From assembly GCF_902459465.1 (NCBI RefSeq), contig NC_047066.1:4402001-4466000 (forward strand): a stretch of 64,000 nucleotides of DNA, in the 5' to 3' direction. This DNA comes from Asterias rubens (taxonomy: Eukaryota). Shown piece by piece: positions 6,392 through 25,130 of this stretch (position 1 is its first letter; every line of letters starts with the position of its first letter). Made by a program: the position numbers and the translations under genes. The notes beneath the pieces were generated by a model, which worked only from the letters and a program-made list of their open reading frames with translations, ran no database searches and was not told the DNA's origin.

Positions 6392-7093
6392 AGGCACTGG
6401 ACACAAATTACTCAAAATAATTGTTAGAACAAAAACCTTCTTGGTAACGAACTGTTGATAGTATAAAACATTGTGCGAAACGGCTCCCTCTGAAGTAGCG
6501 TAGTTTTTGAGAAAGAGGTAACTTCTCACTCAAACAATAAAAGACCTCAGCTGAAGCCTTTTATTATGCATCTAATGAAAGCAAAAATTTTCCAAGTTTG
6601 CAAATTGCAAATTTGAGAACAATCTGAGCCCAAATTTTCCCAGTTCTATTATTTTATGCATATGTTGAGATACACCAAGTGAGAACACTGGTCTTTGACA
6701 ATTACCAAATGTGTTCAGTGTCTTTAAAGGCAGTGGACACTATTGGTATTTATAAGATTATTAGCTTAAAACCTTACTTGGTAATAAGAGAGGTTGAGAG
6801 TATAAAACATTGTGAGAACCGGCACCCTCTGAAGTGCCAAAGTTTTGGAGAAAGAAGTAATTTTCTACCAATGTGTTTTCGAGACCTCAGATTTAGAACT
6901 TGAGGTCTCGAAATCAACCACCTAAACGCACACAACTTCATGTGACAAGGGTGTTTTTTTTCTTTCGTTGTTTCTCACATGTTCGATGACTGATTGAGCT
7001 CAAATTTTCACAGGTTTGTTATTTTATGCATATGTTGAGATACACCAACTGTGAAGGCAAGTCTTTGACAATTACCAATAGTGTCCACTGCCT
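6392..7093. mobile_element. Two adjacent Kolobok-like MITEs (6392-6723, 6728-7093)
   Basis: TTAA at 6388-6391, 6724-6727 and 7094-7097; family-A TIRs. Confidence 0.8.
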
Positions 7094-7269
7094 TTAAGTA
7101 GAAAGAATATCATGCCTGTGCATGTGGCCTATCTGTTCTGGGTCACCAATATGGTGATTCAATCTTGAGCAACAGCCAGTAAGGCAAGGAGAGGTCAGCA
7201 CACAAAATCAGCTGAACTAGTTTATTATCAACTGACCCTTGACGACCCTTGGTGACCTTTGAATTGACC

Positions 7270-10200
7270 TCACCAAGTTGGAGCAGTGTTGGCCAGACGG
7301 CGCATTCGCCTGATGAGAAAAAAAAAGGGGGAAAATAAAGTGGTTAATATTAATTATCTAGATACAGACACTGTACAAGCTATTGTCACATTTTCTTAAA
7401 AACAAATTTAAGAATGAAAACTGATTAGTGCATTATCACAAATATAAAGCGGATAATCTTTAGTGAGGTAGATGGTAGACTGGGCCCCTACAGGGCCCTG
7501 TCTTTATCAGCAATGATAACGACAGGTACTTGCTTTTCAGATCCAGTGATTCCATTGGATACAATGTCATTGGATAAACGTGCAGTGACATAAGCTTTCC
7601 ATTGATGGGCTTTAATTGGTCGGGGTGATTTATGTGCCGCTGACAAACCAAACGAACACTCCCATCACATCTGCCATACCTCAAAGAGGCTTATGTACTT
7701 GCATGTAATACTGAGTGTAAAATAACGTGGACTAGGTAGCTCTATGTGAAATGAATGTAGGTCAAAGGTGAACGTACAGGCCGGCTTGGGGCCGGTTTCT
7801 GGCTTTATTAGGGACTTTTCGTTTTCAACGACGGATGGTTTTGCGACGGTAAAGATGACATTTGGCGTCATCTGCGCATGCGTCGGCTTTGAGGACGGTC
7901 GTCCCTCAATTTCTACGACAGTACTTGGGATGAATCTTCGTTGTGCTGAAAACGACAACGTTTAGATGAACAACCGTCGCAGAACCATCCGTCGCCGAAA
8001 ACGAAAAGTCCCTATTCACGAGCCTCGAAGTGGGACGTCAGATGTTCAGGCTAGGCAGATGGCAGATGTTCCGGTTAAAATCAAGCCACTAGAATTCACC
8101 ACAAGGGGGGCGCTATGACTCACCTGGTATTTCGATCTTGATCCCTGATCTTCTTCTCCATCTCGGCGTCTGTCAACGTCTCAAGGAAGGGGCACCATTG
8201 GTCGGCTTCTCCTTGGTTACGTACCGCAATCTCAACAGTGGGTAAGGGGGATTCACTGAGAATGTGGAATAATATATAATAACGTCATGTTTGTTTTACC
8301 CATATGCACTGATGTGTGTTAGCACTGTATACTCAGTACTTTCCTGAGCTCCGAGATTGCCCGGTAGCTAGAGGCAGTTCGAATAGAATATTTTAGCAGT
8401 GGGTAACGTTAGATTTAATAGACGGAAATATTAATAATGATATTACATAGTATATCTTAGAAATTCTTAACAATCGAAATGATTCCTTAATAAAAACATG
8501 GGCCCCCTTACGATTAAAGGAACATTACAGAATTGGTAAGAAACAAAAATCGTGAAGATCACAGATTTGCATAAAACTTAAACGGTCTAATGATGATGAT
8601 AGTAGAAAACATCCCTTGAAAAATTTCTGTTTGAAATATTTGATGAGAAATAAATAATCTAACTTTGCGTTTGGAGTTTATCGCTCAGTGAGTGCTTTAT
8701 TCAATTTTGTTTGGGCATCGATGCAATGCAAAATTTGTAATTGTTTTTCACTATTCTCTCGTGACCCAGATGGCCGATCGATCTCAAACTTCTACAGGTT
8801 TGTCAGTTAATGTATATGGTGGATTACATAAAGTGCTTACACTGCCAGCAACTGTTTTGTTAGCAAAAACCAATTCTGTAATGTTCCTTTAAACAAGGTT
8901 AACAAATTTAGATTGAAAATTATCTTAGGCATGAAGATTAAAATTGCAAAACCAGAGTCCAGAATGCTCAGGGATAACACAAGAAAATACACAGCATCTT
9001 AAAGGCAGTGGACACTATTGGTAATTACTCAAAATAATTATTGGCATAACAACCATCTAAACGCACACAACTTTGTGTTGCAAGGGTTATTTTTCTTTCA
9101 TTATTATCTCACAACTTCGATGGCCAATTGAGCTCAAATTTTCACAGGTTTGTTATTTTATGCATATGTTGAGATACACCAACTGTGAAGGCTAGTCTTT
9201 GACAATTACCAATAGTGTCCACTGCCTTGAACAAAAATATGTAAAGTGGTTTTTGGTTTATAACAAAATGCACAAAAAGTGACTTTCCTAAAAGCACATA
9301 ACTCTCCAAACAGGTTCTGAATGAACATGCAACACAAATAAATAATCTAAAAGCAACAGTTATGAATTCTTTTAAAATAAGCATTTTTAACAAGCCAAAT
9401 GTAGAGGCGAGGCTTGTATTCTTCGCCAACTTTGGTTTTAATACATCATGCCTTAACCTTAACCCCGGAGTTATTCACTAGAATTCTACATCACTCTTCT
9501 ACATCAATCCAATATCACACAATTAACATCCAAACTGTTGGACACTTTATTGGTATACCTGATCCAAAGTAAAACACCCAGTTTAATGGTGTTACAACAA
9601 AAGAAATAGAACTGGATTTTAAATGATCGAGGAGAAGAAAACAATATAATAATATTCATATTCATATTCATAACACATTTACAAGCACACATACACACAT
9701 TAAAAATATTTAAGAAAACAAAGTAAAACAACAGTGGCGTGTCCAGGAGAGCAAAAAAATATAAAATAAAATAAAAATCTGAAATAAATCTCCAAAAGGC
9801 GTATGTCTCCTAAGAAAAGTGGGTAATTGGGTTACAAATCACTGCATTTTAATCATTAAATTTAACAAAGCACAAACAGGTAAGCCTACCATAATTTGGT
9901 TTCCCAGCCAAATTAAAACATCATATTAAAATGTGACAAGCAAAGTGTTAGCCAGAGGGGTGACTGGGTGTCTTTATGGATACCCTGTTTTATCTGTCAT
10001 TTACTTGTATTCATGTATTGTACAAACAATTTAGTCGCCCAGTTTTGAAATTTCAAGCCATTATGGAAACCTTTTTACAAAATCTTCGTATCCTGATCAC
10101 GTCTGATCCCATCCCACGTAAAGTAGACACAGTTTAAATGCGCAGACCTCAGTGCAACAAAATAAAAGCAAACTTGCTGTTGGATTTGAGGGGTTGGTGG

Positions 10201-13200
10201 TTTGTAAAAAAAGAAGGGAAACAAAGGTATGTTCTGTAAAGATGACCAACCTGAAAGCATATGTTCTCTGATGCCAGCTGAGTTGCCCTCTGATGCTGTA
10301 GGCGATGGCCGTTACAAACTCACCGCCCAGACCCAGGTCGGCGCACAGCTTGAGGGCGTATTCCTCCGGGCTGTTGTCTTTGCAAGCCATGTCCCACTCA
10401 AACTGATCCACTAGGGAGATGTTTCCAACGTGGATGTTCAACTAGGAGCAAGACAAGGAAGAAATGAGATTAATAGATGTATAATTTACATCGGGAGTAA
10501 AGAATATTGATTTAATCCATAGAAATAGAACCCAGAGAACGCTGAGCTCGGCCACCCTCTGTGTCGTTTGTGGACGCAGCGTATCGATACCACGCGATAC
10601 GCGCGTATGGCAAAATTATCATCGCGTGAGACGCGTGTATGGCAAAATGGCAAGATGTCAGCGCACATAGACCGTTTTTACTGTGTTCATAGGTCAATGA
10701 TGATGTCATTGTATGGCAAAATTGTATAGCAAAATATTTTGCCATACATGCGTAACAAAAATGGCGTATGTGCGTCCATAAAAATGGTCTCACAACGAAA
10801 CCGCACGCACAATGAGACACTCAGCATTCTCCGGGTTCTATTTCAATGGTTTAATCCAAACACCGATTTATGTAAAACATTGTGCATCTGACTCTGAACT
10901 ATTAAGTCTGCAAAGCATGCTAATCACACATTTTTTTGTAATGAAAAACAATAATGAAATTTCAGTTTTAGTTGCGGGAGGAAAACCATATAGGGAAAAC
11001 CAAGGGACTGAAAAATCCAGTCGACATGCAAGGCTCCGGTCCGGGCATCGAACCGGGACCACAAGAGTTGGAAGGCAGGGACAGGACCGATTGAGCCAAC
11101 CTGACTACCTACAGGTTTTTTGACGTGGATACTCAGTACTTTCCACGACTTACTAGACCCAGAACCTCAAACATTTTACAAATAAGGTAATAACAGACTC
11201 TGTGCATCACAAGAAAATCAAAACTACCGGTTTTGACGCATTGTGGACTATTTCTTTCTCCCTTGATTACCTCACTTCTTTCAAGAAAATGTTCATGCTC
11301 ACAGAGATTTTAAGAAATCTTGAGAAATTGATTTGCCGAAACCCACATAACCTCCATATGAACATGTACAAAATCCTAAAGCATAAAGTGTTTTTCTGCT
11401 TATGGATCTACGTACTGAACTGGTACCTGCTTAAACACAGTGAGTGGTTATGGTGTCAAAATCATTTGTCATCATATCTCGCCCTCACCCCCCTCCCCTA
11501 CACCCCTCCTTCCCGACACTCACCTTCAAAATGACTCTCTGATCCGATTGGTCCTCCAGTATACTTGTGTCTGCTGGGAAGGCATCAATCTGTGTACGGA
11601 TGGCTTGGGCGATGGACTGTACAAAGTTGACTGGAGGGAGATCCAGATCCTCGCATAAAATTTCAGCGAACATCTCAGGCGTGATTAATGTCTCTGTAAA
11701 TTTAAATTATAATAATAATAATAATGTTTAAAATTTATAGTGCGCCCCTTACATACAAAATGATCAAAGGCGCAGAACACATGTTAAGAAGCACAGAGTG
11801 GAAGAAAAAGACAAAGAAAAAAGACCAGGCCGGTGCCAAAACAAAAGTCTGGGGATACCTTGCATCAAAGCCTACGGCCGATATTGGTGACTGTCAAAGA
11901 CCCTTGTGTATCGCAATAAACAAAGGAAATAACAAACCTGTGAAGTTTTGAGCTCAATCGGTCATAAAAGTCGCACAAATAGTGAAAAACCCAATCATCA
12001 CATTTCAGACTCATGAGATATAAAATTATGTTTGTACTTACTCATTTAAAGGCAGTGGACACTATTGGTAATTACTCAAAATAAATTATTGGCATAAAAC
12101 CTTTCTTGGTGATGAGTAATGGGGAGAGGTTGATGGTATAAAACATTGTGAGAAATGGCTCCCTCTGAAGTGCCATAGTTTTTGAGAAAGAAGTATGTGT
12201 CCATGAATTTGATTTCGAGACCTCAGATTTAGAACTTGAGGTCTCGAAATCAACCATCTAAACGCACACAACTTCGTGTGACAAGGGATTTTTCTTCTTT
12301 CATTATTATCTCGCAACTTCGATGACCGATTGAGCTCAAATTTTCACAGGTTTGTTATTTTATGCATATGTTGAGATACACCAACTGTGAAGGCTAGTCC
12401 TTGACAATTACCAATAGTGTCCACTGCCTTTAATTAAAAAAACTATAGCATTTAAAGCATAAATACAATACTCATATACTTAGACACACAATGAGTAGGC
12501 CCTACTACTACTCTGACTCATAGTGAGTACTACTATTCAGACTCATAAGGAATTCCTCATACTCATAGGTTAGTACAAGTACTCGCACAGAAAGGGAATT
12601 ACTCATTCTTATGGCAAAGTACTATAACTAAGTACTATTTTTCAGACTCATAGAAAAGAACTACTACTCCGACTTATAGCAAAATACTAGTATTCAGACT
12701 CGTAGCACTCAGAGTTCTAGTACTCAGACTGATAAGGAACATTGTAAGCACATCATTACGTGCTAAGCATTATCTTGATTTTTTTTCTTCTTCTGTTTCT
12801 TCTTTGGGTTTTTTTCTTGATACTTTCCGAGTCCTGTACAAAAATATCACAGGTATATTACTTGAATGAGATTTGAACCCACGACCCTTGCAATTCTAAA
12901 GCAGTGTCTTGCCAACTAGACTACCGTAATTGCCCGGTAGCTAGAAGCAGTTCGAATCCTATGTTTTGGCAGGCTTGTTATTTTATGCTTAAGTTGGGAT
13001 ACACAAAGTGAGAAGACTGGTCTTTGACAATTACCAAACGTGTACCTTCTCTTTAAGAAGCACAGAGTGGAAGAAAAAGACAAAGAAAAAAGACTGGTCA
13101 CCAGGCCAGCGCCCAAACAAAAGTTTGGGTATACGTCGCATCAAAGCCTGCGGCCGATATTGGTGACTGTCAAAGACCCTTGTGTTCGAATACTATGTTT

Positions 13201-16200
13201 TGGCAGCGGGTACCACAACAATATAATGTTAAACATCTGTTATTAATATTATCTTAAAATTTAGGTTGAGAGGGACTCACCGTTCTTATTCCACGTAAAG
13301 GTGTCCCTGAGTTTCTGACCTTCAATCTCCATATCAAGCCTGATGGGTACTAGTGTCTCTGGCATGTCTGCATTGTCATGGATTATGGCTGGATCATGAT
13401 CATCATAGCTGCGGAAGAACAACATTCAGGGATTGAAATGATACACAATGAAAGTGTATAAACTCTTCGCTTATGGTAAACAGAGCCATGGAACTAGTTA
13501 AGAGCACTGCACTCAAACTCTGGTGTTTTTGATTAGCAGAGTCTGGGTTTTGGTCCAAGTCGTGACACATGTGTCCTTAAGCAAGGAACTTAACCTTGAT
13601 GCTTCGTCCTTAGGATAGGGCGTTGAGCCGTTGGTCCCTTGTGTTGTGTAACACACATAAAAGAACCCAGTGCACTTATCAAAAAGAGCAGAAGCCCTGG
13701 TGTTCCTGGTTTGATTGGCTGCTTATTACACCACAGCACCTTGTAAACCATTGTATGAAGCTATGTAAAAATGAGTGGGTCTCTTAATTCAAACCTAGTC
13801 CCACATAACTTGCAGGAAAATACGAATGTTGAAGCGCCTTGAGCATCACTGAGTGACAGATATCATCGCTAAATATAAGAAGCCACTATACTACACTTAC
13901 CACATGGGAAATGTTCGTTGTCTTTTCGGACCGACTCGATTACGAGAGATGCTGGTGGAGCACGGTACAGCGTCCAGGTGATGTGAGCTGTTTGGTATAG
14001 CTGGTACCCAATCCCTGCTGCGTTTGGGTTTAGCTTCTCGTAGGTTATTGGTGTCTGTGCTGATTGCGACTGCCCGGTACTTTGAATCCCGGCCCTCGAG
14101 GATCTCCTCAACCTCTGTGGACTTCAGGAGAGTAACGTTGGTGGCAAGTCCATGTTGGCCGAAACCTAAAATAGAATTAAGATTGTTAGGTTTTGTTCTG
14201 CCTCGACGGCATAGTGGGTATGGAGGGTGGATGCATTTATGCGAGTAGGAATGAGACAATCACATGGTAACAAAGCATCAAATTGCCAAAGTATTGCAAA
14301 CTTGAAAAATAAGTTTTTCTAATCTCGCACACATAGAGCTCTTTGAACAAGCCCAACTAGGTCGATCACTGTTCTGTCTGGCTTTATAGTAAACTCTTCA
14401 ATTACATAAGGGCCAACGCATGTGTCACCCTGGTTTTGGCCTTGGTGCCCCTTCACAAGTTTTTTATAGAATTTAACATAAAAGCATCCTGTGCAACTAA
14501 TGCAAAATGGCGTCTTGAAGATGATAATCTAGGCCAGTTCAATCATAGGCACATGTATATATCCTAAACTGATACCAAGGTTACCCATCCTGATATAACA
14601 GAAATTTACTTGACTACAAAATGAAGAAAAACATTACGATTGACAATTTAAAACCATTTGAGTGGAGGAACTTTTCTAATTTGCCATACATGTATGGCAA
14701 TACATACATGTATGTATTTTACTTTGTGCACAAAATAAATTCCAATTTTGTTAAAACTACATCCTAAAACACCAGGTCATCATTCCCATGCCACTTACGA
14801 TCTCCTATTGTGACTATTTTCTTGCGTTCTTCTACTGTTGCCAACTTTCTCCATAGCGATGGGTACTTTTTGTAGAGTGAGCCACGGAACATGCGCAGAT
14901 AGTACCCAACCTGCAAAACAAAATTGAAATATTATTATTTGTTTGATTTTTTTCTTCATTTTTTCTGAAAAGTTTATTCCACACTTATAATGGATTTTAT
15001 AACCTTTTCCTTTTCTATGGCTCACACAGGTTTTTTTTAAAAAGGGAAATAAAGGCAGAAATTCACGGCAAGTGGTGTGTCGTGCAGAGCTGTATGCTTC
15101 ATTTTTGAAAGGGCAAAGGCACCAAGGCAATTTCTCCTTGGTACAGGGCACCCTATAAAGGAAATTGTAAATTTCTACTGCAGCATTTCAAGGGCATCAA
15201 GGCAATGACCAGGGGGCATGGAGGCAATCGCCTTCGTTGCCTCTGTGCCTCTTTGAAGTATCAGGCAGAGTCGTTGTCCAGCGGTTGAGCTCCGGTAGAG
15301 GCACTTGTGTCCTGATAATAAGCTAGACACTTTGTAAACCACTGCTTCATGCTTCGGATGGGACATAAAATAAAGCTGTAGGTCTAGCTCCTGTGGCTGT
15401 GTGTGTTGTTTAAAAAACCTATATCAACGCACACAAAAGGGTCCTACTACTTGCCGTCAACTCGCCGTCAACTCACTTCGCCGTCAACTCGCTGTCAACT
15501 CCTCCAATATACATTTAAAATCCACAAAAGAAACATAGAACTGTAAAGTATCAGCTCAAAGAGAATTCGCGAAAGTTTTAGGTCATATTTCGGAATAAAA
15601 ATTGAGTTTTTTTCTCTTGAAAAAATTATCTCGAAACAGCAAAACCGTCGGCCGCCATCTTGCTTTTTCACATTGATTAGTCTTGGCCCAAGATGTCAAT
15701 GACTGGTACTTTTTTTTTATCAACACAAAGTCGTTTTTGTGAATGAATTTTTACTGAAAACCATGAGAAATATGTAGTTTAGCCCAGACTTAACACTTCC
15801 GTGTACCATTTATAAATTTTTCATGTAAATTTAATGAGTTGACGGCACGAAAATGAATTGACGGCGAGTTGACGGCAAGTCGGCAAGTTGACGGCAAGTC
15901 GGCGAGTTGACGGCAAGTAGTAGGACCGCACACAAAATATCCCAGTAAATATCAGTAAGTATACACACTTATCGCAAAGAGACTAGAACTATTTCGGTTT
16001 CTACCGCTATCGTCTCCTGTAACTATAAAATGTATTCAGAGTTCCGTATTCAAACTCAGAATGAAACAGCAGGTAAATTTATTTAATGGCCTTTTGATTG
16101 ATATTGATTGAAAACTTTTCTGTTGTAATTCATAATTGTGTACGACGTACGAGGGGAATGTGCGTGCTTCAGCAGGTTCACGCTTTGAATGGTCAAACAA

Positions 16201-16591
16201 TGACTGAGTTGAGAGGGGAACAAATCCGTATCCTGCCACCACCTTTTCCGTTTAAATATGAGATTTCTAACAACAATAGCAATCTCATAAACATATTAAA
16301 ATCGCTCCAACAGGCGGAACAACACACAAAACACACACGTCATAGTTTGACATCGATGAAATCATAGATGTAGAAATATTGACAAAGAATATTTCAACGA
16401 ACGTGAACGTTCCAAACTCTATATTCTGCGCCCAATGTACGGGTCTCTTACTTTAAATTCAACTGATTTGAAATCTCACTTACCTCAGAACCGATCATGA
16501 ACTTGTCTCCACCTTCCTCAAACTGGAAAACATCAGGTTTTTTGCCGTAAGTTCGCGGAGGAATCGGGACTTTCTCACCGTTGGCCGCCAT
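7270..16591 (-). CDS. SMARCB1: SWI/SNF (BAF) core subunit SMARCB1/SNF5/INI1, full length, 381 aa
   Basis: Coding exons (minus): 16484-16591, 14799-14910, 13901-14165, 13281-13408, 11524-11693, 10251-10441, 8124-8255, 7270-7309. All introns are GT-AG with matching phases; 1146 nt in total. Translation has TYGKKP...[26 protein letters not shown] (winged helix), [34 protein letters not shown] (RPT1), [18 protein letters not shown] (RPT2) and [26 protein letters not shown], all recognisably SNF5. Confidence 0.97.
7811..8012. mobile_element. 202-bp MITE with ~40-bp TIRs in last SMARCB1 intron
   Basis: GGGACTTTTCGTTTTCAACGACGGATGGTTTTGCGACGGT versus ACCGTCGCAGAACCATCCGTCGCCGAAAACGAAAAGTCCC, with TA on both flanks. 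Confidence 0.8.
8518..8888. mobile_element. TTAA-flanked MITE, second Kolobok-like family (second copy 26983-27368)
   Basis: TIR AGGAACATTACAGAATTGG ... CCAATTCTGTAATGTTCCT, with TTAA on both sides; the homologous copy at 26983-27368 also has TTAA flanks. Confidence 0.8.
10518..10848 (+). mobile_element. MITE with ~30-bp CCATAGAAAT TIRs and internal GTATGGCAAAAT repeats (second copy ~23083-23400)
   Basis: CCATAGAAATAGAACCCAGAGAACGCTGAG ... CTCAGCATTCTCCGGGTTCTATTTCAATGG; the homolog at 23083-23400 has a decayed right end. Confidence 0.75.
12050..12429 (-). mobile_element. Family-A MITE, complete (SMARCB1 intron 5)
   Basis: TTAA-AGGCAGTGGACACTATTGGTAATT ... AATTACCAATAGTGTCCACTGCCT-TTAA. Confidence 0.85.
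12868..12970 (-). mobile_element. Second tRNA-like dispersed repeat (fragments at ~8320-8410, 13185-13230, 31820-31900, 32690-32820, 50940-51000)
   Basis: Reverse-strand B-box GGTTC(G/A)AAT(C)CC and A-box-like TAGTCTAGTTGG within a recurring GCAATTCTAGAGCAGTGTCTT...GATTGCCCGGTAGCTAGAGGCAGTTCGAAT unit. Confidence 0.6.
15439..15928. mobile_element. Non-autonomous Mutator-like (MULE) element in SMARCB1 intron 1
   Basis: TIR GGGTCCTACTACTTGCCGTCAACTCGCC / GGCGAGTTGACGGCAAGTAGTAGGACCG, with a 9-bp direct repeat CACACAAAA at 15430-15438 and 15929-15937. The MULE call rests on the TSD length. A remnant of the family is at ~54930-54968. Confidence 0.75.
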
Positions 16592-16625
16592 CTCGTTGTG
16601 TTTGTAAAACAAAAGCAACTACAAG

Positions 16626-16641
16626 ACGCCCTCTCGTGAAA
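16626..16641 (-). promoter_or_regulatory. Conserved 16-bp element TTTCACGAGAGGGCGT upstream of SMARCB1
   Basis: Identical 16-mer also at 20956-20971 and 25115-25130, each 34-36 nt upstream of the ATG, with diverged flanks. Confidence 0.7.
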
Positions 16642-18510
16642 TATTTTGAGGGAAAACACGTGGGGGGAGGGGACTACCCAGGAAAAAGGGGAGGGTGAAT
16701 CCCGAATCGCCTTTTAATATACCAGATTACAATGCGGTAGTTTGTTTATTCTTATAGCTTTGTCCTTCAATCACATCTTAAATGACAAGGCTCTAATTTA
16801 ATGTTGATGAAGAAAAAAAACCTGGGTCAAGTTTGGGTAAAGTCTTTGGATTGAATAACCCGAGTTAGTTTTACTCAAAGTTTATATTTGTTTGTTTTTA
16901 GTTTTACTCAAAGTATATATTTATATTTGTTTGTTTTAAAGTATCTAAGTGTTTATCATAGTGATTTTTTTATTTATACTCTATTCGAGGATTGGATAAG
17001 CAGGCTTTTGAGTCATAGTGTAGTAGTACGCTTTTGTTTATCCTGGCCGTCTTAGAATGTATTGTTGTCCCTTCCTTCCTCCACATCCCGTACCTGTCCT
17101 GCACCCTTTTGTCTAATCCCGCTCCTCTAGTTACCCTGTATTTAAGTTACCTTTTTTGAAGTCTTATTATCCTTTGTTTTACTTGTATGTATTTGTTTTT
17201 GACACTGGCCGAATAAATAATAATAATAACAATAATAATAGTAGAACTGACCTAAAAAAATATTGCAAAGATGTAGTCATAAAGCCAAACAGGGCTATAA
17301 GCCATTTCAGCCAGGACTGGTGAACTTTCATTTCTCAAGGCAGAGGCAAGCATAAAAACCTTCCAATTTCCCAGAACAGAGGCAACTTAAAAACTTTCAA
17401 ATAGAGGGAGCCAGTCATTGAATGTCTTTCCTTCACCTCTTAAAAGTCTGGCAGCATAAATCATTTTAAACTTTAAAATAATGAGTATTTCCTAGATATA
17501 AGAAATGAGAAATAAATGAATAAATAAAACAATACAGACAGTTGATACTTTTAGAATCTTTAATTTTATATATTATTTCTGTATATAATGACTACATATG
17601 TTTAAGACTCTTTTCAAGACATTTCAAAGAATCTCGGCAGCACAGCAAAATAAATAAAAGTTCACAGATTTACAAATAACTTAAAGGGTTTACAGAAGGT
17701 AATGGTTAAACACTTCTCTTGAAATATTATTCCATGAAATGCTTAACTTTTTGAGAAAACATTAAAACAATTATCAATTCTCGACATCGAGAACTACATA
17801 GGGAAACAAGGGTGGGTTTTCCAGTTATTTTCTCCCGACTCCGATGACCGATTGAGCCTTAATTTTCACAGGTTTGTTATTTTATATATAAGTTGTGATA
17901 CACGAAGTGTGGGCCTTTGGACAATACTGTTTACCGAAAGTGTCCAATGGCTTTAAAGACACAGGACACCTTTGGTAATTTTGTCCAAGACCAGTCTTCT
18001 CACTTGGTGTATCTCTACATGTGCACAAAAAACAAACCTGTGAAAATTTAAAATCATTTGGTCATCCAAGCTGCGAGATAATAATGGAAGAAAAAACACC
18101 ATTGTCACATGAAGTTGTGTGCTTCCAGATATGGTTGATTTCGGGACCCCAAAATCCAATTCTGAGATCTCAAAATCAAATTTAAATATTTTAGTGGAAA
18201 ATTACTTCAAGTTCTTTCTTGAAAACTACAAGTTCAGAGGGAGCCGTTTCTCACAATGTTTTTATACTATCAACAGCTCTCCATTGCTTGTTACGAAGTC
18301 AGTTTTTATTCTAACAATTATTTTGAGTAATTTCCAAAAGTGTCCACTGCCTCTATCCCCTGGCTTAGGCTCCATCTCTTGCTTTGGCTCTGCGACATGC
18401 TACGGTCGCAGTAGAAATGCAGTGAGCATGAACTGGCTATCAGGCCTTCACATTTTTGGAGCAGTGTGTATTTTGCACACAGGGGGTGGTTCCAACATCC
18501 AATGGCACCT

Positions 18511-18745
18511 GGGCCCAATTTCATAGAGCTGCTAAGCACAAAAATTTGCTTAGCATGAAATGTTTGCCTCGATAAAAACAGGACTACCAACCAAATGTCC
18601 ACATGATTTTCAGGATAATCAAACAAATACCATTAGCAAACAAAATGCAACAAATGGAAATTCGATTAGTAATCCTGTTTTTATCAAGGAAGAAATTTCA
18701 TGCTAAGCAAATGTTTGTGCTAAGCAGCTCTATGAAATTGGGCCC
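18511..18745. mobile_element. GGGCCCAATTTCAT-TIR MITE (family B). Other copies 3985-4226, 37637-37885, 41935-42128, 49478-49716, 52977-53212
   Basis: Long TIRs GGGCCCAATTTCATAGAGCTGCT(A)AGCAC ... GTGCTAAGCAGCTCTATGAAATTGGGCCC, ~235 bp, no ORF. Superfamily uncertain (possibly PIF/Harbinger). Confidence 0.8.
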
Positions 18746-19167
18746 TAGAGCCGGAGCTGAAGCCGAAGTATGAGAAAGGTTTCAGGTATTAATACATACT
18801 TTGGTTTGCGGTAACACCATGTGTGTATCTACTTGCCAGGTAGAGTTTGTTCTTAGAGAACTGTCTTTCTTTATTCTACTACCGCAGAGTTGATTATCGG
18901 ATGTTCGGGAGACTTCTCAGTTCTGAAAAGAACTGTCCTGCTTTTGAACTACTACCCGGAAGGTATAGAAATAGGCTGGGACTACTTCCTTCAGGTATTG
19001 CTGTTGTGCAGTCTCCAGGGGAACCTCACCTCAGGATTGGTTCCTTATACTTGCCATGATTCAGTATGTATCAACCATTGTTCCGCAGATTTGCGTTGCC
19101 TAATAATTGAAGCATGACCTTGCACTAACTGATAAGGCTATTTGCGGTGCCACTGATTTAATCACTT

Positions 19168-20919
19168 TCATAATGGAGCCTGCTCAATAGTGTCCATGTA
19201 CTTCAACCAGTCGGGTGTTAAGAACAAATATTCATCAACCTCGGAGCTTGGGCTAGGCGTAAGTTGGAGTTCTTTGTGCACAGTTAACGGACAGGCCACA
19301 GTGGAGTGTTTTGCTTCGGGAGCCTTCACAGTCTTTGTATAAGCGGATGAGCGGTACTTTGCATCTCTGCCAGCGAGGATCTCCTCTATCTCTGAGACCT
19401 TTAGAAGAGTAATGCTGCTGGGAAGTCCATGTTTGTAGAGACCTTAAAATAAAAAACAACATTGTAATTGTAAGGCGATTTTTAGCCAGGTGGTGGTGGT
19501 GAATATGTAGGGAAGGTGGACACTGGCCTCGATAATGAGAACGAAAATGTTAACAATGCACACCCTTGATTAGTTAATTAAGCGTATGAGTATTCTGCAT
19601 GAAGCAATTCAACCAAAAGAATGCGCTCTCTTTGCACCCTGATTGTGATCGTTTTCGTTATCGCTGCAGTCTAAACGACAAGATGGTACAAAGCATCAAT
19701 TAATGGCCAAATTATTGCAAGCCAGGAACTAGGCCACGCATGACCTCCAATGCCCCATGTCTTGGCCTTGTTGCCCCTTTAAGAGTTTCCCTATGACTGT
19801 AAGAAATGCCTTTGTAAGGTGAAAATGGAAGTGCCCTTTGTAAAATGAAAATGGGCATGCGCTACAAAACAGCTTGGTTGAATTTATTTTAAGACACTGG
19901 ATACTATTGGTAATGTCAAAGACCATTCTTCTCTCTTGGTGTATCTCAACATAATATGCATAAAATGACAAACCTGTAAAATGTTTAAGCTCAATTGGTC
20001 GTTGAAGTTGTGCGATAATAATGAAAAAAATAACAATTTAACACCCTTGTCACACGAAGTTGCTTTCAAGACCTTAAAATCTAATTCTGAGGTCTCAAAA
20101 TCAAATTCATGGAAAATTACTTCTTTTTCAAAAACTATCTTACTTCAGAGGAGGGTTACGTTATCGCAACTACTTCAGAGGGAGCCGTTTCTCACAATTT
20201 TTTTATAATATCAACAGCTCCCCATTTCTTAACCAAGTGGGCCTAAGGTTTTATGCTAATAACTATTTTGAGTAATTACCAATAGTGTCCACTGCCTATA
20301 ATGGTTATACTTTCTAGGTCACTTACGTCGATGTGCTGTCTTGGCTATTAAACAACGTTGTTCTCTTGTTGGTTTCTTTCTCCTAAGAAGAGGATACCTT
20401 TTGTAGACTCCGCCAGCCATCATGTCCAGATACCACCCCACCTGCAAACCACCAAAAAAAAAATAACTTTGTCAATGTTTGGCTTCCAGAGCCAGAGGAT
20501 TTTTTTCAGGGAAATTATAGTATACAGGCAGAAATTCATGGTCCAAGATTTTCAAAATACACTCAATATTCGTATTACAAATAATTGTTGTTATTAAAAA
20601 TCGGCTGTTTTCGACAGGGTGCTAAATTTGTTTTTGTGCATGTCCCAAGTTTGCAGCAAGGTCCCGTAGTGATACAGCGCTGTACTCCATTTAGAAAAAA
20701 ACACTCTCCCTCGGACCATGGCATTCACATTCACAACTGTAGACTGTACTGTACCATTTTACGAATCTCTTACTTTCTAATTGAACCGATGGTATGAATC
20801 GTACTTACCTCAGTACCTATCATATACCTTTTTCCACGTTCCTTAAACTGGAAAACATGTGGTTTTTTGCCGTAAGTTCGTGGAGGTACGGGAGCTGCCT
20901 CATCGCTGCCCTCCGCCAT
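19168..20919 (-). CDS. SMARCB1-like paralog A: winged-helix-only protein, 166 aa, 3 exons
   Basis: Exons 20809-20919 ([37 protein letters not shown]), 20327-20441 (VGWYLDMMAGGVYKRYPLLRRKKPTREQRCLI...), 19168-19442 (...HGLPSSITLLKVSEIEEILAGRDAKYR...EYLFLTPDWLKYMDTIEQAPL*). Intron positions and phases (0,1) match SMARCB1 exons 1-3, splice sites are GT-AG, and there is no internal stop. Expression is not demonstrated. Confidence 0.85.
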
Positions 20920-20955
20920 CTCTTTCACGTTTTGTGCCTGATGGTGATTTACAGC

Positions 20956-20971
20956 ACGCCCTCTCGTGAAA
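20956..20971 (-). promoter_or_regulatory. Same 16-bp element upstream of paralog A
   Basis: Plus-strand ACGCCCTCTCGTGAAA, 36 nt from the ATG; a G-rich GC-box-like tract (GGGTGGGGGCGG, ~21001-21012) lies further upstream. Confidence 0.7.
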
Positions 20972-22129
20972 CAGAAAAGGAGAAAACACAATGGTCGGGC
21001 CGGGTGGGGGCGGAACCACCTAAATCACAGTTTTCAAATAGTTCATAGTTCAATTTCAAGGTTTATTGTTCAATTCAACCATTTAAAATGACAAAATATA
21101 AAATTGAAGGAGACAAAACTTAAATAATAGATTAAAGTGGGGGAGTCCGCTGGCATTTAAGGAGTTCAAAACTCATCACTTATGTCATGTTCATCCTCCA
21201 TGCTTCCCTTGTATGTCTTTGTCTTATAGTCATGCTGATGGTCTTAGTAAACTATGCATTTTGTTTGTAGGCCTATTCTCAGCTTGCATCATTGTATTTT
21301 CACTTATTTCTTCACAACTTGTTTCCCACCCTAAGCAGCGACCACACCACTACACAGCAGTACAAAATGCCATACAGTACAGTTTGTTAATCCTCAAATC
21401 AAAATATCAAAGATCTTGTTTCATGTTTATGCAACCGAAAACCATCAATGAATGTTTTGCATTTGAACAATGTTTTTAATTCTTAAAAGATTGAATTTGT
21501 TGCAAACTGACATACAAAATATTGCAAAGATGTAATATTTGCAATATTTTGTAGGTCAGTTTACAACAATGTCAATAGTTTATACTTTTTAACTAAAATC
21601 TTTTACAATTTTATACAAATCTGTACATAATATTGATTTAATTGTAATTATTTTATATAACGTCCTTTACACTATGGGTTTTTGCCAATAAAATACTATA
21701 AATAAGTTGAACAAAATAAAAATTTCAGCCTAAAAAGACGTTTTAGCTATTTACATCATTTATGGTTGAACCTGTAAAAAAAAAAACATTTCAAGCTCCA
21801 TGATGAACAGCCGCTTCCTGTGGCAGGTGGAAACTGTCACAATACGAGGCTCCACCATTGATGTCCTCACTCCGTCCATAAACCAGCAGTACATAAAATA
21901 ATGGTTAATAGAGATATTCATAGAATATCTGCTAGCAGTGCTAGAGAATATCATTACATGGTGTTACCGCAAACCTTCGTAATTCCACCATGCAAAGTTT
22001 CAAATTCACTTAAAGACACTGGACACTATTGGTAATTGTCAAAGACCAGTCTTCTCACTTGGTGTATCCAAACATAATATGCACAAAATAACAACGGGTT
22101 GTTTTGAAACCTGTAAAATAAACTCACTT

Positions 22130-22269
22130 GGAGACTTTTAGGACGCTTGGTGGCAGCAGACTTACCAGGTGAAATCCATTGTTCTCGGTCATATGCGCAC
22201 GCTCAGAACTACGTAAACAATGGGAATATACCTGGTAAGTCTGCTGCCACCTAGCGTCCAAAAGTCTCC
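22130..22269. repeat. 140-bp palindromic insertion inside a family-A MITE
   Basis: GGAGACTTTTAGGACGCTTGGTGGCAGCAGACTTACCAGG / CCTGGTAAGTCTGCTGCCACCTAGCGTCCAAAAGTCTCC; a right-arm remnant is at ~62763-62812. Confidence 0.8.
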
Positions 22270-22675
22270 CATTGGTCATCAAAGTTTCGTGAGAATAATG
22301 GAATAAAAAAAAACACCCTTGTCGCACCAGTTGTGTGCTTTTAGATGCTTGATTTCGAAACTTCAGCTGAGGTCTGAAAATCAATTCAATATTTTAGTGA
22401 GAAGTTAACTCTTTCTCAAAAACTACATTACTTCAGCTGTTTCTCACATTGTTTTATACAACCAACAGCTCTCCATTACTAGTTACAGAGTAAGTTTTTA
22501 TGCTAACAATTATTTTGAGTAATTACCAATAGTGTCCAGTGCCGGCCCTTTAAGAAAAATATCGGCATAAAACCCATGATATGATTTGTGACCAAATCAT
22601 TAGTACTTAAAACAGACTAGATTTCAGGTCAATGTCAGGCAAAAATTAATTCAATATCAGGCATATTTGCTTTAA

Positions 22676-23030
22676 AGGCAGTGGACACTATTGGTAATTA
22701 CTCAAAATAATTATTAGCATAAAACCTTTCTTGGTAACGAGTAATGGGGAGAGGTCGATGGTATAAAACATTGTGAGAAACAGCTCCATCTGAAGTGCCA
22801 TAGTTTTCGAGAAAAAAGTAATTTTCCACGAATTTGATTTCGAGAAAATCATCCATCTAAACACACACAACTTCGTGTGACAAGGGTGTTTTCTTCTTTC
22901 ATTATTATCTCGCAACTTTGATGACCGATTGAGCTCAAATTTTCACAGGTTTGTTATTTTATGCATAATGTTTGAGATACACCAACTGTGAAGGCTAGTC
23001 TTTGACAATTACCAATAGTGTCCACTGCCT
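22676..23030 (-). mobile_element. Family-A MITE, complete. Further copies or fragments at ~3590-3920, 9003-9227, 17957-18352, 19892-20297, 22013-22545, 33661, 34395-34612, 35060-35435, 36829, 38559-38898, 43594-43745, 50217-50610, 61278-61640
   Basis: Same TIRs and the internal signature GTCACACGAAGTTGTGTG...GAGCTCAAATTTTCACAGGTTTG in all copies. Confidence 0.85.
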
Positions 23031-23516
23031 TTAATTAATTCTACTTGAGTTGTATAACCTAGCAGGCTGATATTTAGGGTTTCCATAGAAATTGAACCCG
23101 GAGAACGCTGAGTTCGGCCGTCCTCTGTTGGCGTGACATATCGATAAAACGCAATACGCATGTATGGCAAAATGATCATCACGTGACACGCGTGTATGGC
23201 AAATTGAGCATACGTGACACGCGTGTATGGCAAAATGGCAGCGCACATAGACCGTTCCCATGTTTTCATTGGTCAATGTGACGTCTACTGTATGGCAAAA
23301 TAATTTGCATACACGCGAACAAAAATGGCATATGCGAGTCCATAAAAATAGTCACACAACGAAACCGTATCCACAGTGACACACTTAGCATTCTATTTCT
23401 CTGCGGTTCCAAATACTTGTCACTGTCCAGTAGTAATATCCATCAATGCACTGAAAGCCTGGAAATTGCATTGATTACAGATGAATATTGCGGTGCCAGA
23501 GAATTAATCACTGTCA

Positions 23517-23776
23517 TAATAGACTTGTGGACAGGTCTTTAAATGTCTGTCGTGGTGATAGCGTTCCGACTCTATTCCGAATCTCCCTGCAATTCCTGCG
23601 GTATTCTCGTGAGACTGCTGCCCCCACGAGTCTACTGCTCTCATGACTACAGTCCAATGGGGAGTAGAAGTGGGCAACCAGCAGCTTGCCCGAGAGTAGT
23701 GATCTCGCGAGAGCACCACCAAAACTTGACTATCTCAGCGCGGCAGACCACTAACAACCTGTCCACAAGTCTACTA
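23517..23776. mobile_element. 260-bp MITE with 19-bp TIRs and 3-bp TSD at the stop codon of paralog B (relative at ~63590-63835, inverted)
   Basis: TAATAGACTTGTGGACAGG ... CCTGTCCACAAGTCTACTA, with TCA at 23514-23516 and 23777-23779. Paralog A shows the empty site (TAATCACTTTCATAATGG). Confidence 0.8.
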
Positions 23777-25079
23777 TCATAATGGAGCCTGCTCAATAGT
23801 GTCCATGTACTTCAAACAGTCGGGTGTTAAGAACAAAAATTCATTATTCTCAGAGCTTGCACTGGTCAAAAGTTGGCATTCTTGTGGCAAAATCAAAGGA
23901 GAGGGTAGAGATGAGTGTTTTGAAGGAGCTTTCAAGGTCTTTTTGGCTTTCATAGCCTTGTTGGTTTTCACAGTATATCTGGTTTTCACCCTCTTTCTGG
24001 CTTTCACAGTCTTTTTGGCTTTCACCGTCTTTTTGGCTCCCCGGTACTTTACATCTCGGCCCTCGACTATCTCCTCAATTTCTGTAGCCTTCACGAGAGT
24101 AACGAAGTAGGGAAGGTTGTGACTGTCGGGACCTGAACAACAAAAAATACAATTGCAACATGATTTTTCTTACCTTTACTCATTTCTCAAAAACTACAGC
24201 ACCTAAGTTAGTAACATTTTCATGGAAGCTTTGTACTAAGTTCAATGTAAATCTGTGAACATTAGAAAAAAAGTGAAAAGACCCTTTAACAAATTAATTC
24301 AACTTTCTGGGTCACTTACAAATACAATCCAGAATCTTGAGTAACATCTTGCGCTCTGTTGCTGATGTCACTTTTCTCCAGAGCAAGGGAAACCTTTTGT
24401 AGATTGAGCCACTGTAAATGCCGAGATAATCACCGACCTGTGAAACATTTTTTGAATATTTTTTTTACTCTTGAACATTTAATTGTTGTCCCCAAATAAA
24501 AATGACAACGTAACCCTGACAGCGAGAGGAGGCCTCCTCCTGACGGCGGGAGGAGGGTCACATTATCGCAACTAATGTCACACTCACCATGCTCACACAA
24601 CTATTCAAAAATAGTGTTGAACTTGAAGAATTAGTTTTATTAAAAAGTTATTTTAAAAAAACAACTTTTGAAAGAAAGTTTACAAAAATGTTGAATTTAT
24701 TTTAGTCAGAGAACATGGAGGTAGAAATAGACCTGCATGTATGCGAGGTTTGTTTATCAACAACAGGCCCTCAGCTCCCACAACCCACCGCGTGTTTCAT
24801 GCACAAACACAACAACAACAAAACAAAACACAACACAATCAATCCTCCTTCAATTTCAATGCCAAACAAAAAGACAATCCCTATATTTAAGTTAGGCCCA
24901 ATGCCCATATAATAATACGATGTATGATGACACTTGAGCGGCTTACCTACCTCAGAACCTATCATAAATTTGTTTGTATCATCTACAACATTATCCAGAC
25001 GCAAAACTCGTGGTTTTTTGCCGTAAGTTGGGCGACGCACGGGGGCTTTGCCGGTCTCACTTTTTATTTTGGCTGCCAT
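23777..25079 (-). CDS. SMARCB1-like paralog B: winged-helix-only protein with Lys-rich hexapeptide repeat, 200 aa, 3 exons
   Basis: Exons 24951-25079 (MAAKIKSETGKAPVRRPTYGKKPRVLRLDNVVDDTNKFMIGSE), 24320-24437 (VGDYLGIYSGSIYKRFPLLWRKVTSATERKML...), 23777-24132 (...TLVKATEIEEIVEGRDVKYRGAKKTVKAKKTVKA...EFLFLTPDCLKYMDTIEQAPL*). GT-AG sites, phases 0 and 1 as in SMARCB1, open frame throughout. Confidence 0.85.
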
Positions 25080-25114
25080 TTCTTTTTTGTTTGACACTTT
25101 TTATTTTGCAACGT

Positions 25115-25130
25115 ACGCCCTCTCGTGAAA
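25115..25130 (-). promoter_or_regulatory. Same 16-bp element upstream of paralog B
   Basis: Plus-strand ACGCCCTCTCGTGAAA, 35 nt from the ATG; a G-rich tract (GGGGTGGGCGGGG, ~25138-25151) lies further upstream. Confidence 0.7.

What the first reader, a model, noticed from the sequence alone, without database searches (positions are those of the whole stretch)
16484..25130. Tandem array of intact winged-helix-only SMARCB1 paralogs next to the parent gene
Seen: two 3-exon genes (A 19168-20919, B 23777-25079) sit head-to-tail upstream of SMARCB1 in the same orientation and reproduce its exons 1-3. On my ungapped alignment, exon 2 is only 17/37 (A) and 18/37 (B) identical to the parent. Even so, every splice site is canonical, phases are kept, and all length differences are multiples of 3 (exon 1: 108/111/129 nt; exon 2: 112/115/118 nt). 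Neither has a premature stop. Established: the metazoan SMARCB1 N-terminus is a winged-helix DNA-binding domain, while RPT1/RPT2 and the C-terminal helix mediate BAF assembly and nucleosome acidic-patch contact. Inference: these are old, selected genes encoding stand-alone WH proteins that probably cannot join BAF by the usual route. They could be decoys or competitors for WH partners, or re-purposed chromatin proteins. I know of no description of such a family, but could not search.
Basis: partly seen in the sequence, partly recalled or inferred. Interest (0 to 1): 0.88.

Follow-up and report, generated by a model that had tools for sequence, protein, structure and literature searches.

The report
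Winged-helix-only SMARCB1 duplicates in starfish
Next to the chromatin-remodelling gene SMARCB1, this starfish genome carries two old, shortened copies that are transcribed and correctly spliced and encode only its small DNA-binding domain plus a new tail; what they do is unknown.

Summary
On the minus strand, two 3-exon genes lie head-to-tail upstream of a complete SMARCB1: A at 19168-20919 (166 aa) and B at 23777-25079 (200 aa). All splice sites are canonical and all length differences are in frame.

They are real genes. NCBI already models both; A is named 'SMARCB1-like'. RNA contigs from several studies and two organism labels carry the spliced forms. B's two junctions were seen directly in four runs.

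Homology between the copies is confined to exons and one invariant 16-nt promoter element. Introns no longer align. Paralog dS is 0.6-1.0, against 0.03-0.09 between the two organism labels, so the duplications long predate that split.

B is under purifying selection between the two labels (dN/dS about 0.2, p 0.0003-0.006). A is inconclusive (0.58, 9 changes).

The winged-helix (WH) fold residues are kept, but protein evolution is about 20 times faster than in the parent. Both copies lost R37 and R40 of the DNA-contact cluster. B gained a Lys-rich 18-nt repeat array.

No relatives carrying the new tail were found elsewhere, and no paper describes them. Function is inferred only. This is a lineage-restricted new variant of moderate interest.

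The parts
13901..16591 (-). Parent SMARCB1, exons 1-3 (16484-16591, 14799-14910, 13901-14165). The gene continues to lower coordinates (exons near 13264-13425, 11488-11706, 10252-10441 and 8123-8284).
   Evidence: NCBI model of 381 aa with PF21459 + PF04855.
19168..20919 (-). Paralog A, 166 aa: exon 1 20809-20919, exon 2 20327-20441, exon 3 19168-19442 (stop at 19168-19170). The 3'UTR runs to at least about 18916.
   Evidence: Identical to NCBI protein P0001. PF21459 83 bits. RNA contigs.
23777..25079 (-). Paralog B, 200 aa: exon 1 24951-25079, exon 2 24320-24437, exon 3 23777-24132 (stop at 23777-23779).
   Evidence: NCBI 200-aa model at the same range. Splice joints seen directly in 4 runs.
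16626..16641 (-). Invariant 16-nt promoter element TTTCACGAGAGGGCGT, 35 nt upstream of the parent ATG.
   Evidence: exactly 3 matches in the 64 kb window, 0 expected by chance.
20956..20971 (-). The same 16-nt element, 37 nt upstream of A's ATG.
25115..25130 (-). The same 16-nt element, 36 nt upstream of B's ATG. RNA coverage stops at about 25109.
23928..24038 (-). 18-nt tandem array (6.2 copies) encoding the KKTVKA-type Lys-rich segment of B (46 aa, net charge +18).
19135..19233 (-). A: the last 21 codons (acidic-hydrophobic tail ending ...LKYMDTIEQAPL), the stop, and about 35 nt of 3'UTR. The coding part is about 97% identical to the matching block of B.
23780..23842 (-). B: the last 21 codons, the same tail as in A.
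23509..23784 (.). Inverted-repeat element (MITE-like, 50-nt arms) inserted immediately after B's stop codon, within the transcribed 3'UTR.
   Evidence: X2 record 15 bridges it.

Best explanation
A and B are lineage-restricted, protein-coding partial tandem duplicates of SMARCB1.

Shown:
- A segment holding the core promoter and exons 1-3 was copied upstream of the parent. The copy acquired a stop inside former exon 3 and was duplicated again.
- Both copies are transcribed from promoters that keep the parent's invariant 16-nt element, and both are spliced exactly as the parent's first two introns.
- They encode a stand-alone INI1-type winged-helix (WH) domain followed by a disordered tail.
- RPT1/RPT2 and the C-terminal helix are absent, so they cannot be core BAF subunits.
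- Four of the six basic residues that contact nucleosomal DNA in PBAF are kept (K45, R46, R52, K53). R37 and R40 are lost.
- The WH stays strongly basic, and B adds a Lys-rich repeat tail.

Inferred: they act as free chromatin- or DNA-binding WH proteins. Alternatively they occupy in trans the sites normally used by the parent's WH (ARID1A ARM5 in BAF, nucleosomal DNA near SHL+6.5 in PBAF), and so modulate rather than build the remodeller. The acidic-hydrophobic C-terminal 21-mer may be a partner-binding or self-masking motif.
For: Gene models and annotation.

Transcription and splicing:
- B: joints 24130>24318 (skips 187) and 24435>24949 (skips 513), each marked 'cut +2', in X2 (organism A) and X3, X4, X5 (organism B). 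One 581-586-nt contig holds all three exons.
- B: depth is 0 in most bins of intron 1 and upstream of about 25116.
- A: a 465-nt contig equals 264 nt of exon 3 + 115 nt of exon 2 + 86 nt of exon 1. Depth in A's intron 1 is 0 in all four runs.
- Many further runs hold the two exon 3 sequences.

Selection:
- Homology is confined to exons.
- B between organism labels: 11.5 synonymous vs 8.5 nonsynonymous changes, dN/dS 0.21-0.25, binomial p 3e-4 to 6e-3, no indels, no stops.
- Neutral simulation at d=0.3: P(no stop) is 0.011 for A and 0.0065 for B, before counting indels or splice sites.
- The promoter 16-mer is identical in all three copies while its flanks have diverged.

Fold:
- phmmer against PDB 5aj1, E 8e-21.
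- AF2 with an alignment gives block-mean pLDDT mostly >90 over residues 11-100 (one block 79), 80 for 101-110, and a disordered tail.
- Foldseek top hit is 5aj1, followed by SMARCB1 chains of BAF and PBAF.

Residues: read against Allen 2015 (PMC4509781) and the PBAF structure preprint (10.1101/2022.05.20.492795).
Against: - A's comparison between organism labels gives dN/dS 0.58 from only 9 changes, not distinguishable from 1.
- Long-term paralog dN/dS is 0.57-0.68. WH branch lengths are about 20 times the parent's (0.97 and 1.03 vs 0.05), so constraint is weak on average.
- R37 and R40, 91% and 99% conserved among about 80 metazoan SMARCB1 fragments, are lost in both copies.
- There is no protein-level evidence, no tissue information, and no orthologs beyond one close relative.
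- The competitor/modulator role is pure inference.
Confidence: 0.6

Rival explanations
1. A and B are transcribed but functionless partial duplicates on their way to decay. Their ORFs are still open by luck or because decay is slow, and the transcripts are a by-product of the duplicated promoter. This applies most plausibly to A.
For: - A's dN/dS of 0.58 is not significantly below 1.
- Paralog dN/dS is 0.57-0.68.
- Protein evolution is about 20-fold accelerated.
- Two near-invariant DNA-contact arginines are lost.
- No homologs with the tail were found elsewhere.
Against: - B's dN/dS is 0.21-0.25, with p as low as 3e-4.
- The joint neutral probability of both ORFs staying open is about 7e-5, before counting indels and eight splice-site dinucleotides.
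- All length changes are in frame.
- Exons are conserved while introns cannot be aligned.
- The orthologs under the second organism label have no indels or stops.
Confidence: 0.2
2. B is a linker-histone-like or nuclear basic protein that arose by convergence. Its winged helix plus Lys-rich tail would bind linker or entry-exit DNA independently of BAF, possibly in a specialised chromatin state such as the germline. A would be a less specialised sister.
For: - The architecture (WH followed by a 46-aa segment of net charge +18 built from an 18-nt repeat) mirrors histone H1.
- The SMARCB1 WH binds nucleosomal DNA near the exit site in PBAF.
- The repeat length is unchanged under the second organism label.
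- Run X1 holds A but not B's exon 3, so the two genes are regulated differently.
Against: - There is no sequence relation to the H15 globular domain; Pfam gives only INI1.
- R37 and R40 are lost.
- No tissue data are available.
- The shared housekeeping-type promoter element and presence in most RNA runs argue against strict germline specificity.
Confidence: 0.1
3. The locus matters at the DNA or RNA level, not through proteins. Duplicated promoters and transcription units upstream of SMARCB1 would act as insulators, promoter competitors or sources of regulatory RNA for the parent gene.
For: - Three identical core-promoter elements lie in tandem within 8.5 kb.
- The intergenic stretch 21100-21972 is transcribed, and B's transcript runs on through the inverted-repeat element.
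Against: This does not explain open reading frames, in-frame indels, conserved splice sites or B's excess of synonymous changes.
Confidence: 0.07
4. The copies are an assembly or haplotype-duplication artefact.
For: None found.
Against: The copies are at most about 80% identical in exons and cannot be aligned in introns. Each is recovered separately in independent RNA and DNA runs and under a second organism label. An independent metagenome contig matches B's exons 1-2 at 99.5%.
Confidence: 0.01

Closest known systems
SMARCB1 / INI1 / SNF5 / BAF47 (the adjacent parent gene)
   Same: N-terminal INI1-type winged helix (PF21459); exon structure of exons 1-3; core promoter element; lineage-specific states shared with the parent (K12, K53, R103, R108 in human numbering).
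   Different: No SNF5 repeats and no C-terminal acidic-patch helix. Protein evolution is about 20 times faster. R37 and R40 are lost. There is a new acidic-hydrophobic C-terminus, and in B a Lys-rich repeat.
PHF10 / BAF45a N-terminal domain and the SKI/SnoN/DACH DHD, BCOR and DNTTIP1 domains (Allen et al. 2015, PMC4509781)
   Same: The same variant winged-helix fold used outside SMARCB1 in chromatin proteins. Foldseek ranks SnoN, BCOR and DNTTIP1 directly below SMARCB1 for the model of A.
   Different: Those are ancient, distantly related domains embedded in larger proteins. A and B are recent direct derivatives of SMARCB1 and have no other domain.
Linker histone H1 (analogy for B only)
   Same: A winged-helix globular domain followed by a long Lys-rich, disordered C-terminal segment.
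   Different: No homology to the H15 domain. B ends in an acidic tail and derives from a remodeller subunit.
microProteins / single-domain competitors derived from multi-domain regulators (e.g. Id proteins, plant LITTLE ZIPPER; from my own knowledge)
   Same: A duplicate that keeps only one interaction domain of its multi-domain parent, and so could titrate the parent's partners.
   Different: No binding partner or dominant-negative effect has been shown here. A and B (166-200 aa) are larger than typical microProteins.

Membership tests
Pfam PF21459 INI1_DNA-bd (SMARCB1-type winged helix) | Profile match above the gathering score | tested here: met
   A: 83 bits, E 1.6e-23, covering profile positions 1-82. 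B: exon 2 alone scores 40.8 bits against a cutoff of 27, plus 17-18 bits on exon 3. B could not be scanned as one spliced protein.
Pfam PF21459 INI1_DNA-bd (SMARCB1-type winged helix) | Variant winged-helix (DHD-like) fold | tested here: met
   A: the AF2 model has block-mean pLDDT mostly >90 over residues 11-100. Foldseek top hit is 5aj1 with TM 0.69 normalised to the target. The alignment consisted mainly of SMARCB1 fragments, so the model is not independent of them. B was not modelled.
Pfam PF21459 INI1_DNA-bd (SMARCB1-type winged helix) | Basic DNA-contact cluster R37/R40/K45/R46/R52/R53 | tested here: not met
   R37 is D in A and G in B; R40 is A in A and S in B. K45, R46, R52 and K53 are kept. 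Residue list from 10.1101/2022.05.20.492795 and PMC4509781.
SNF5/SMARCB1 core BAF subunit (PF04855) | SNF5 domain with RPT1 and RPT2 that binds SMARCC SWIRM | tested here: not met
   The ORFs end at 166 and 200 aa. PF04855 hits only the 381-aa parent. tblastn shows nothing beyond exon 3 in A or B.
SNF5/SMARCB1 core BAF subunit (PF04855) | C-terminal basic helix that contacts the H2A-H2B acidic patch | tested here: not met
   Absent. The C-termini are acidic (net -4 to -5 over the last 25 aa).
Non-functional (pseudogenised) partial duplicate | Disabling lesions: stops, frameshifts or lost splice sites | tested here: not met
   None in the window or in the orthologs under the second organism label.
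Non-functional (pseudogenised) partial duplicate | dN/dS indistinguishable from 1 | tested here: inconclusive
   B: 0.21-0.25, significantly below 1. A: 0.58, not significant, 9 changes, exon 1 not covered.
Linker histone H1 | H15/GH1 globular domain | tested here: not met
   Pfam scans of B's exons return only INI1_DNA-bd.
microProtein-type competitor | Binds and titrates a partner of the parent protein | not testable with these tools
   This needs co-IP or binding assays. Only the single-domain architecture is shown.

The most novel reading that the evidence does not exclude
A remodeller subunit's winged helix has been released as free proteins. B has converged on a linker-histone-like design: WH, then a Lys-rich repeat tail, then an acidic self-masking end. 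It would bind nucleosome entry/exit DNA, where the SMARCB1 WH sits in PBAF, and compete with or gate SWI/SNF engagement. The locus would then be a natural separation-of-function experiment for the WH domain.
Probability: 0.12. Interest if true: 0.75.

Novelty: new variant of a known kind. Interest (0 to 1): 0.5.

Why it matters
The role of the SMARCB1 winged helix is still debated. It docks on ARID1A in BAF, contacts nucleosomal DNA in PBAF, and is the target of schwannomatosis mutations.

Naturally occurring, expressed and at least partly selected WH-only proteins show what the domain can do without the rest of SMARCB1. They also show which surface residues are dispensable: R37 and R40 are lost, while K45, R46, R52 and K53 and the fold residues are kept.

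The locus is also a clean example of a partial tandem duplicate becoming a new gene. It kept the core promoter, gained a new stop and tail, expanded a repeat, and probably underwent gene conversion.

The scope is limited. Only two genes under two closely related organism labels are known, and there are no functional data.

Tried and rejected
- B exon 3 as a word-indexed protein query found nothing.
- phmmer of A exon 3 against 1.84 billion representatives found only A itself plus three giant proteins. Those proved to be cadherin-type repeats whose weak matches are summed, so they are spurious.
- A profile search with A plus the exon pieces of B and the parent gave 114 hits. Every sequence I read was an ordinary SMARCB1 N-terminal fragment or a single-exon ORF call, including the window's own exons. 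None had the A/B tail.
- Other sea-star contigs carrying parent exons had no DNA available or were too short for synteny. Locus L002 is the same species, 99.5% identical.
- My idea that the tail derives from the parent's conserved HHLDAVP segment is colinear but not significant: alignment score 17 against a shuffle mean of 20. My earlier guess that the stop sits on the old exon-3 donor site has no alignment support either.
- Single-sequence AF2 of A failed (pLDDT 34). Only the alignment-based model is usable.
- The spliced 200-aa B protein and the spliced parent have no reference or protein id. They were therefore not submitted to structure, family or look-up tools as whole proteins, and I did not type them in.
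- Tissue specificity could not be assessed because the run metadata are coded or empty.
Full report
**Observation**

The region is read on the minus strand. A complete SMARCB1 starts at 16591. Its exons 1-3 are 16484-16591, 14799-14910 and 13901-14165, and later exons with SNF5-repeat sequence lie at lower coordinates.

Two further genes lie upstream in the same orientation:
- A: 20809-20919, 20327-20441, 19168-19442.
- B: 24951-25079, 24320-24437, 23777-24132.

Exon lengths are 108/111/129 nt and 112/115/118 nt. All introns are GT..AG, phases are kept, and the ORFs are 166 and 200 aa.

Pfam INI1_DNA-bd matches each copy. tblastn finds no further copy in the window.

**Source and existing annotation**

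The exact 166-aa protein is in public databases as P0001, named 'SWI/SNF-related ... subfamily B member 1-like'.

Its contig is LR699096.1 of GCA_902459465.3. From memory this is the Asterias rubens assembly, so the animal is a starfish.

Four gene products are called at the locus:
- a 360-aa Ion_trans gene, head-to-head with B;
- a 200-aa product without a Pfam hit, which is B;
- the 166-aa A;
- the 381-aa parent with PF21459 + PF04855.

The genes are therefore annotated. No paper mentioning them was found.

**Transcription and splicing**

RNA-type runs of organism A match the window at about 99.7%. Runs of a second label, organism B, match at about 95-97%. Both hold A's and B's exon 3.

For B, two joints appear in X2, X3, X4 and X5: 24130>24318 (skips 187) and 24435>24949 (skips 513). 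With the stated +2 ambiguity these are exactly the predicted introns. Single contigs of 581-586 nt carry exon 3 + 118 nt + exon 1. Depth is 0 in most bins of intron 1 (low signal in 24493-24648 and 24701-24804) and 0 beyond about 25116.

For A, a 465-nt contig aligns to 19177-19440. It has 201 further letters, equal to exon 2 (115 nt) plus 86 nt of exon 1. Its exon-1 part cross-matches B's exon 1. Depth in A's intron 1 is 0 in all four runs. The joint rows for A were hidden among repeat-derived joints, so A's splicing is shown by contig arithmetic, not by listed joints.

Run X1 holds A but not B's exon 3, so the two genes are not always co-expressed.

**Age and selection**

blastn between the three loci finds homology only in exons, about 55 nt of intron 1 (A versus parent), the promoter element and interspersed repeats.

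| Comparison | dS | dN/dS | Source |
|---|---|---|---|
| A-B (paralogs) | 0.63 | 0.62 | |
| A-parent | 0.77 | 0.68 | |
| B-parent | 1.01 | 0.57 | |
| B, organism B vs window | pS 0.07-0.09 | 0.21-0.25 | |
| A exons 2-3, organism B vs window | pS about 0.03 | 0.58 | |

The duplications are therefore many times older than the split between the two labels.

For B, all differences in organism B's contigs could be listed. There are 11.5 synonymous against 8.5 nonsynonymous changes, no stop and no indel, even in the repeat array. The binomial p against neutrality is 3e-4 to 6e-3.

For A, only exons 2-3 were covered, with 3 synonymous against 6 nonsynonymous changes. This is not significant, and several of these sites are polymorphic.

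A neutral simulation at d=0.3 leaves the ORF open in 1.1% of trials for A and 0.65% for B. This is before counting indels or splice sites.

In a WH tree, the parent's terminal branch is 0.05 and those of A and B are 0.97 and 1.03. A and B join each other with 97/86 support, with a long-branch caveat, and sit next to the parent.

My reading is a burst of fast evolution after truncation. B is now clearly constrained; A is unresolved.

**Promoter**

The 16-mer TTTCACGAGAGGGCGT occurs exactly three times in 64 kb, 35-37 nt upstream of each ATG. Zero matches are expected by chance, and the flanks have diverged. B's RNA coverage ends a few bases downstream of it. It is most likely a core promoter element retained by selection.

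**Protein features**

A aligns to the solved human WH (5aj1) with E 8e-21.

With a 68-row alignment, AF2 gives block-mean pLDDT mostly above 90 for residues 11-100 (one block at 79), 80 for 101-110, and about 50 for the rest. Foldseek returns 5aj1, then SMARCB1 chains of BAF and PBAF, then SnoN, BCOR and DNTTIP1. This is the same neighbourhood described by Allen et al. (PMC4509781).

I compared the three proteins at the 25 positions that are at least 90% conserved in about 80 metazoan SMARCB1 fragments:
- The parent differs at 1 (R53K), A at 8 and B at 6.
- Fold residues are kept: T9, G11, P14, V32, G33, G41, Y44, P48, L50, R60, E95, G102.
- R37 and R40 are replaced in both copies (D/A in A, G/S in B).

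R37 and R40 belong to the basic cluster R37/R40/K45/R46/R52/R53 placed on nucleosomal DNA in PBAF (10.1101/2022.05.20.492795). The other four stay basic.

A's WH is more basic than the parent's (net +12 against +5). B carries a 46-aa segment of net +18 encoded by an 18-nt array of 6.2 copies. Both end in an acidic-hydrophobic 21-mer.

**The tail**

The last 63 coding nt are 97% identical between A and B, with no synonymous difference. The similarity continues for about 35 nt into the 3'UTR, while the rest of exon 3 is about 73% identical.

The tails are not specially conserved between the two organism labels: P152L in A, K190E in B. Gene conversion explains this better than selection on the peptide.

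**Mechanism**

Shown: real, spliced mRNAs; open frames kept against neutral expectation; purifying selection on B; a WH fold without the BAF-assembly modules.

Inferred: the proteins are free chromatin- or DNA-binding WH proteins. They may also occupy in trans the ARID1A ARM5 site or the DNA site used by the parent's WH, acting as modulators. A linker-histone-like role for B is a minority reading.

The main rival is slow decay of transcribed duplicates, which is tenable mainly for A.

**Novelty and limits**

No homolog with the tail was found among 1.84 billion representatives, or by a profile search of the 5.8-billion set. However, B itself is missing from those sets, so absence there is weak evidence.

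Distribution beyond two closely related organism labels, tissue pattern and protein existence remain untested.

I rate this a new variant of a known kind: a domain-only paralog of a remodeller subunit, of moderate interest.

Noticed in passing
window 21100-21972: Unspliced RNA contigs cover this stretch between A's promoter and B's 3' end in runs of both organism labels. It could be a roughly 2.7-kb 3'UTR of B running on through repeats, or a separate non-coding transcript.
   Followed up: no
window 23509-23784: A MITE-like element with 50-nt inverted arms is inserted immediately after B's stop codon. The duplicated target appears to include the stop. RNA contig X2 record 15 bridges it, so it is part of the mRNA.
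   Followed up: partly
window 19135-19233 vs 23780-23842 plus about 23488-23523: A block of about 100 nt (the last 21 codons plus the start of the 3'UTR) is about 95% identical between A and B, against about 73% elsewhere. Synonymous sites are included, so gene conversion is the probable cause.
   Followed up: partly
window 17800-18355, 19880-20300, 22000-23040, 12045-12437, 9000-9230, 7000-7100: Many copies of one interspersed repeat of about 400 nt (ends like ...CCAATAGTGTCCACTGCC) lie in introns and intergenic DNA. Some form inverted pairs. Word depth in the RNA contigs is very high, up to 10^6.
   Followed up: no
window 16585-16600 and 20913-20928: The start codons of the parent and A sit in GAGATGGCGGC, which resembles the YY1-type AAGATGGCGGC motif often found at translation starts of housekeeping genes (from my own knowledge). 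B has GAAATGGCAGC.
   Followed up: no
window 18495-18745: A perfect-looking hairpin element with long inverted arms (GGGCCCAATTTCATAGAGCTGCTAAGCAC...) lies in the A-parent intergenic region, downstream of A's 3'UTR.
   Followed up: no
window from about 28036 upward, + strand: The next gene upstream of B is an Ion_trans (PF00520) gene of 360 aa, transcribed divergently.
   Followed up: no
runs X1 vs X2: Run X1 holds A's transcript but none of the sampled words of B's exon 3. X2 and many other runs hold both, so A and B are expressed differently.
   Followed up: no
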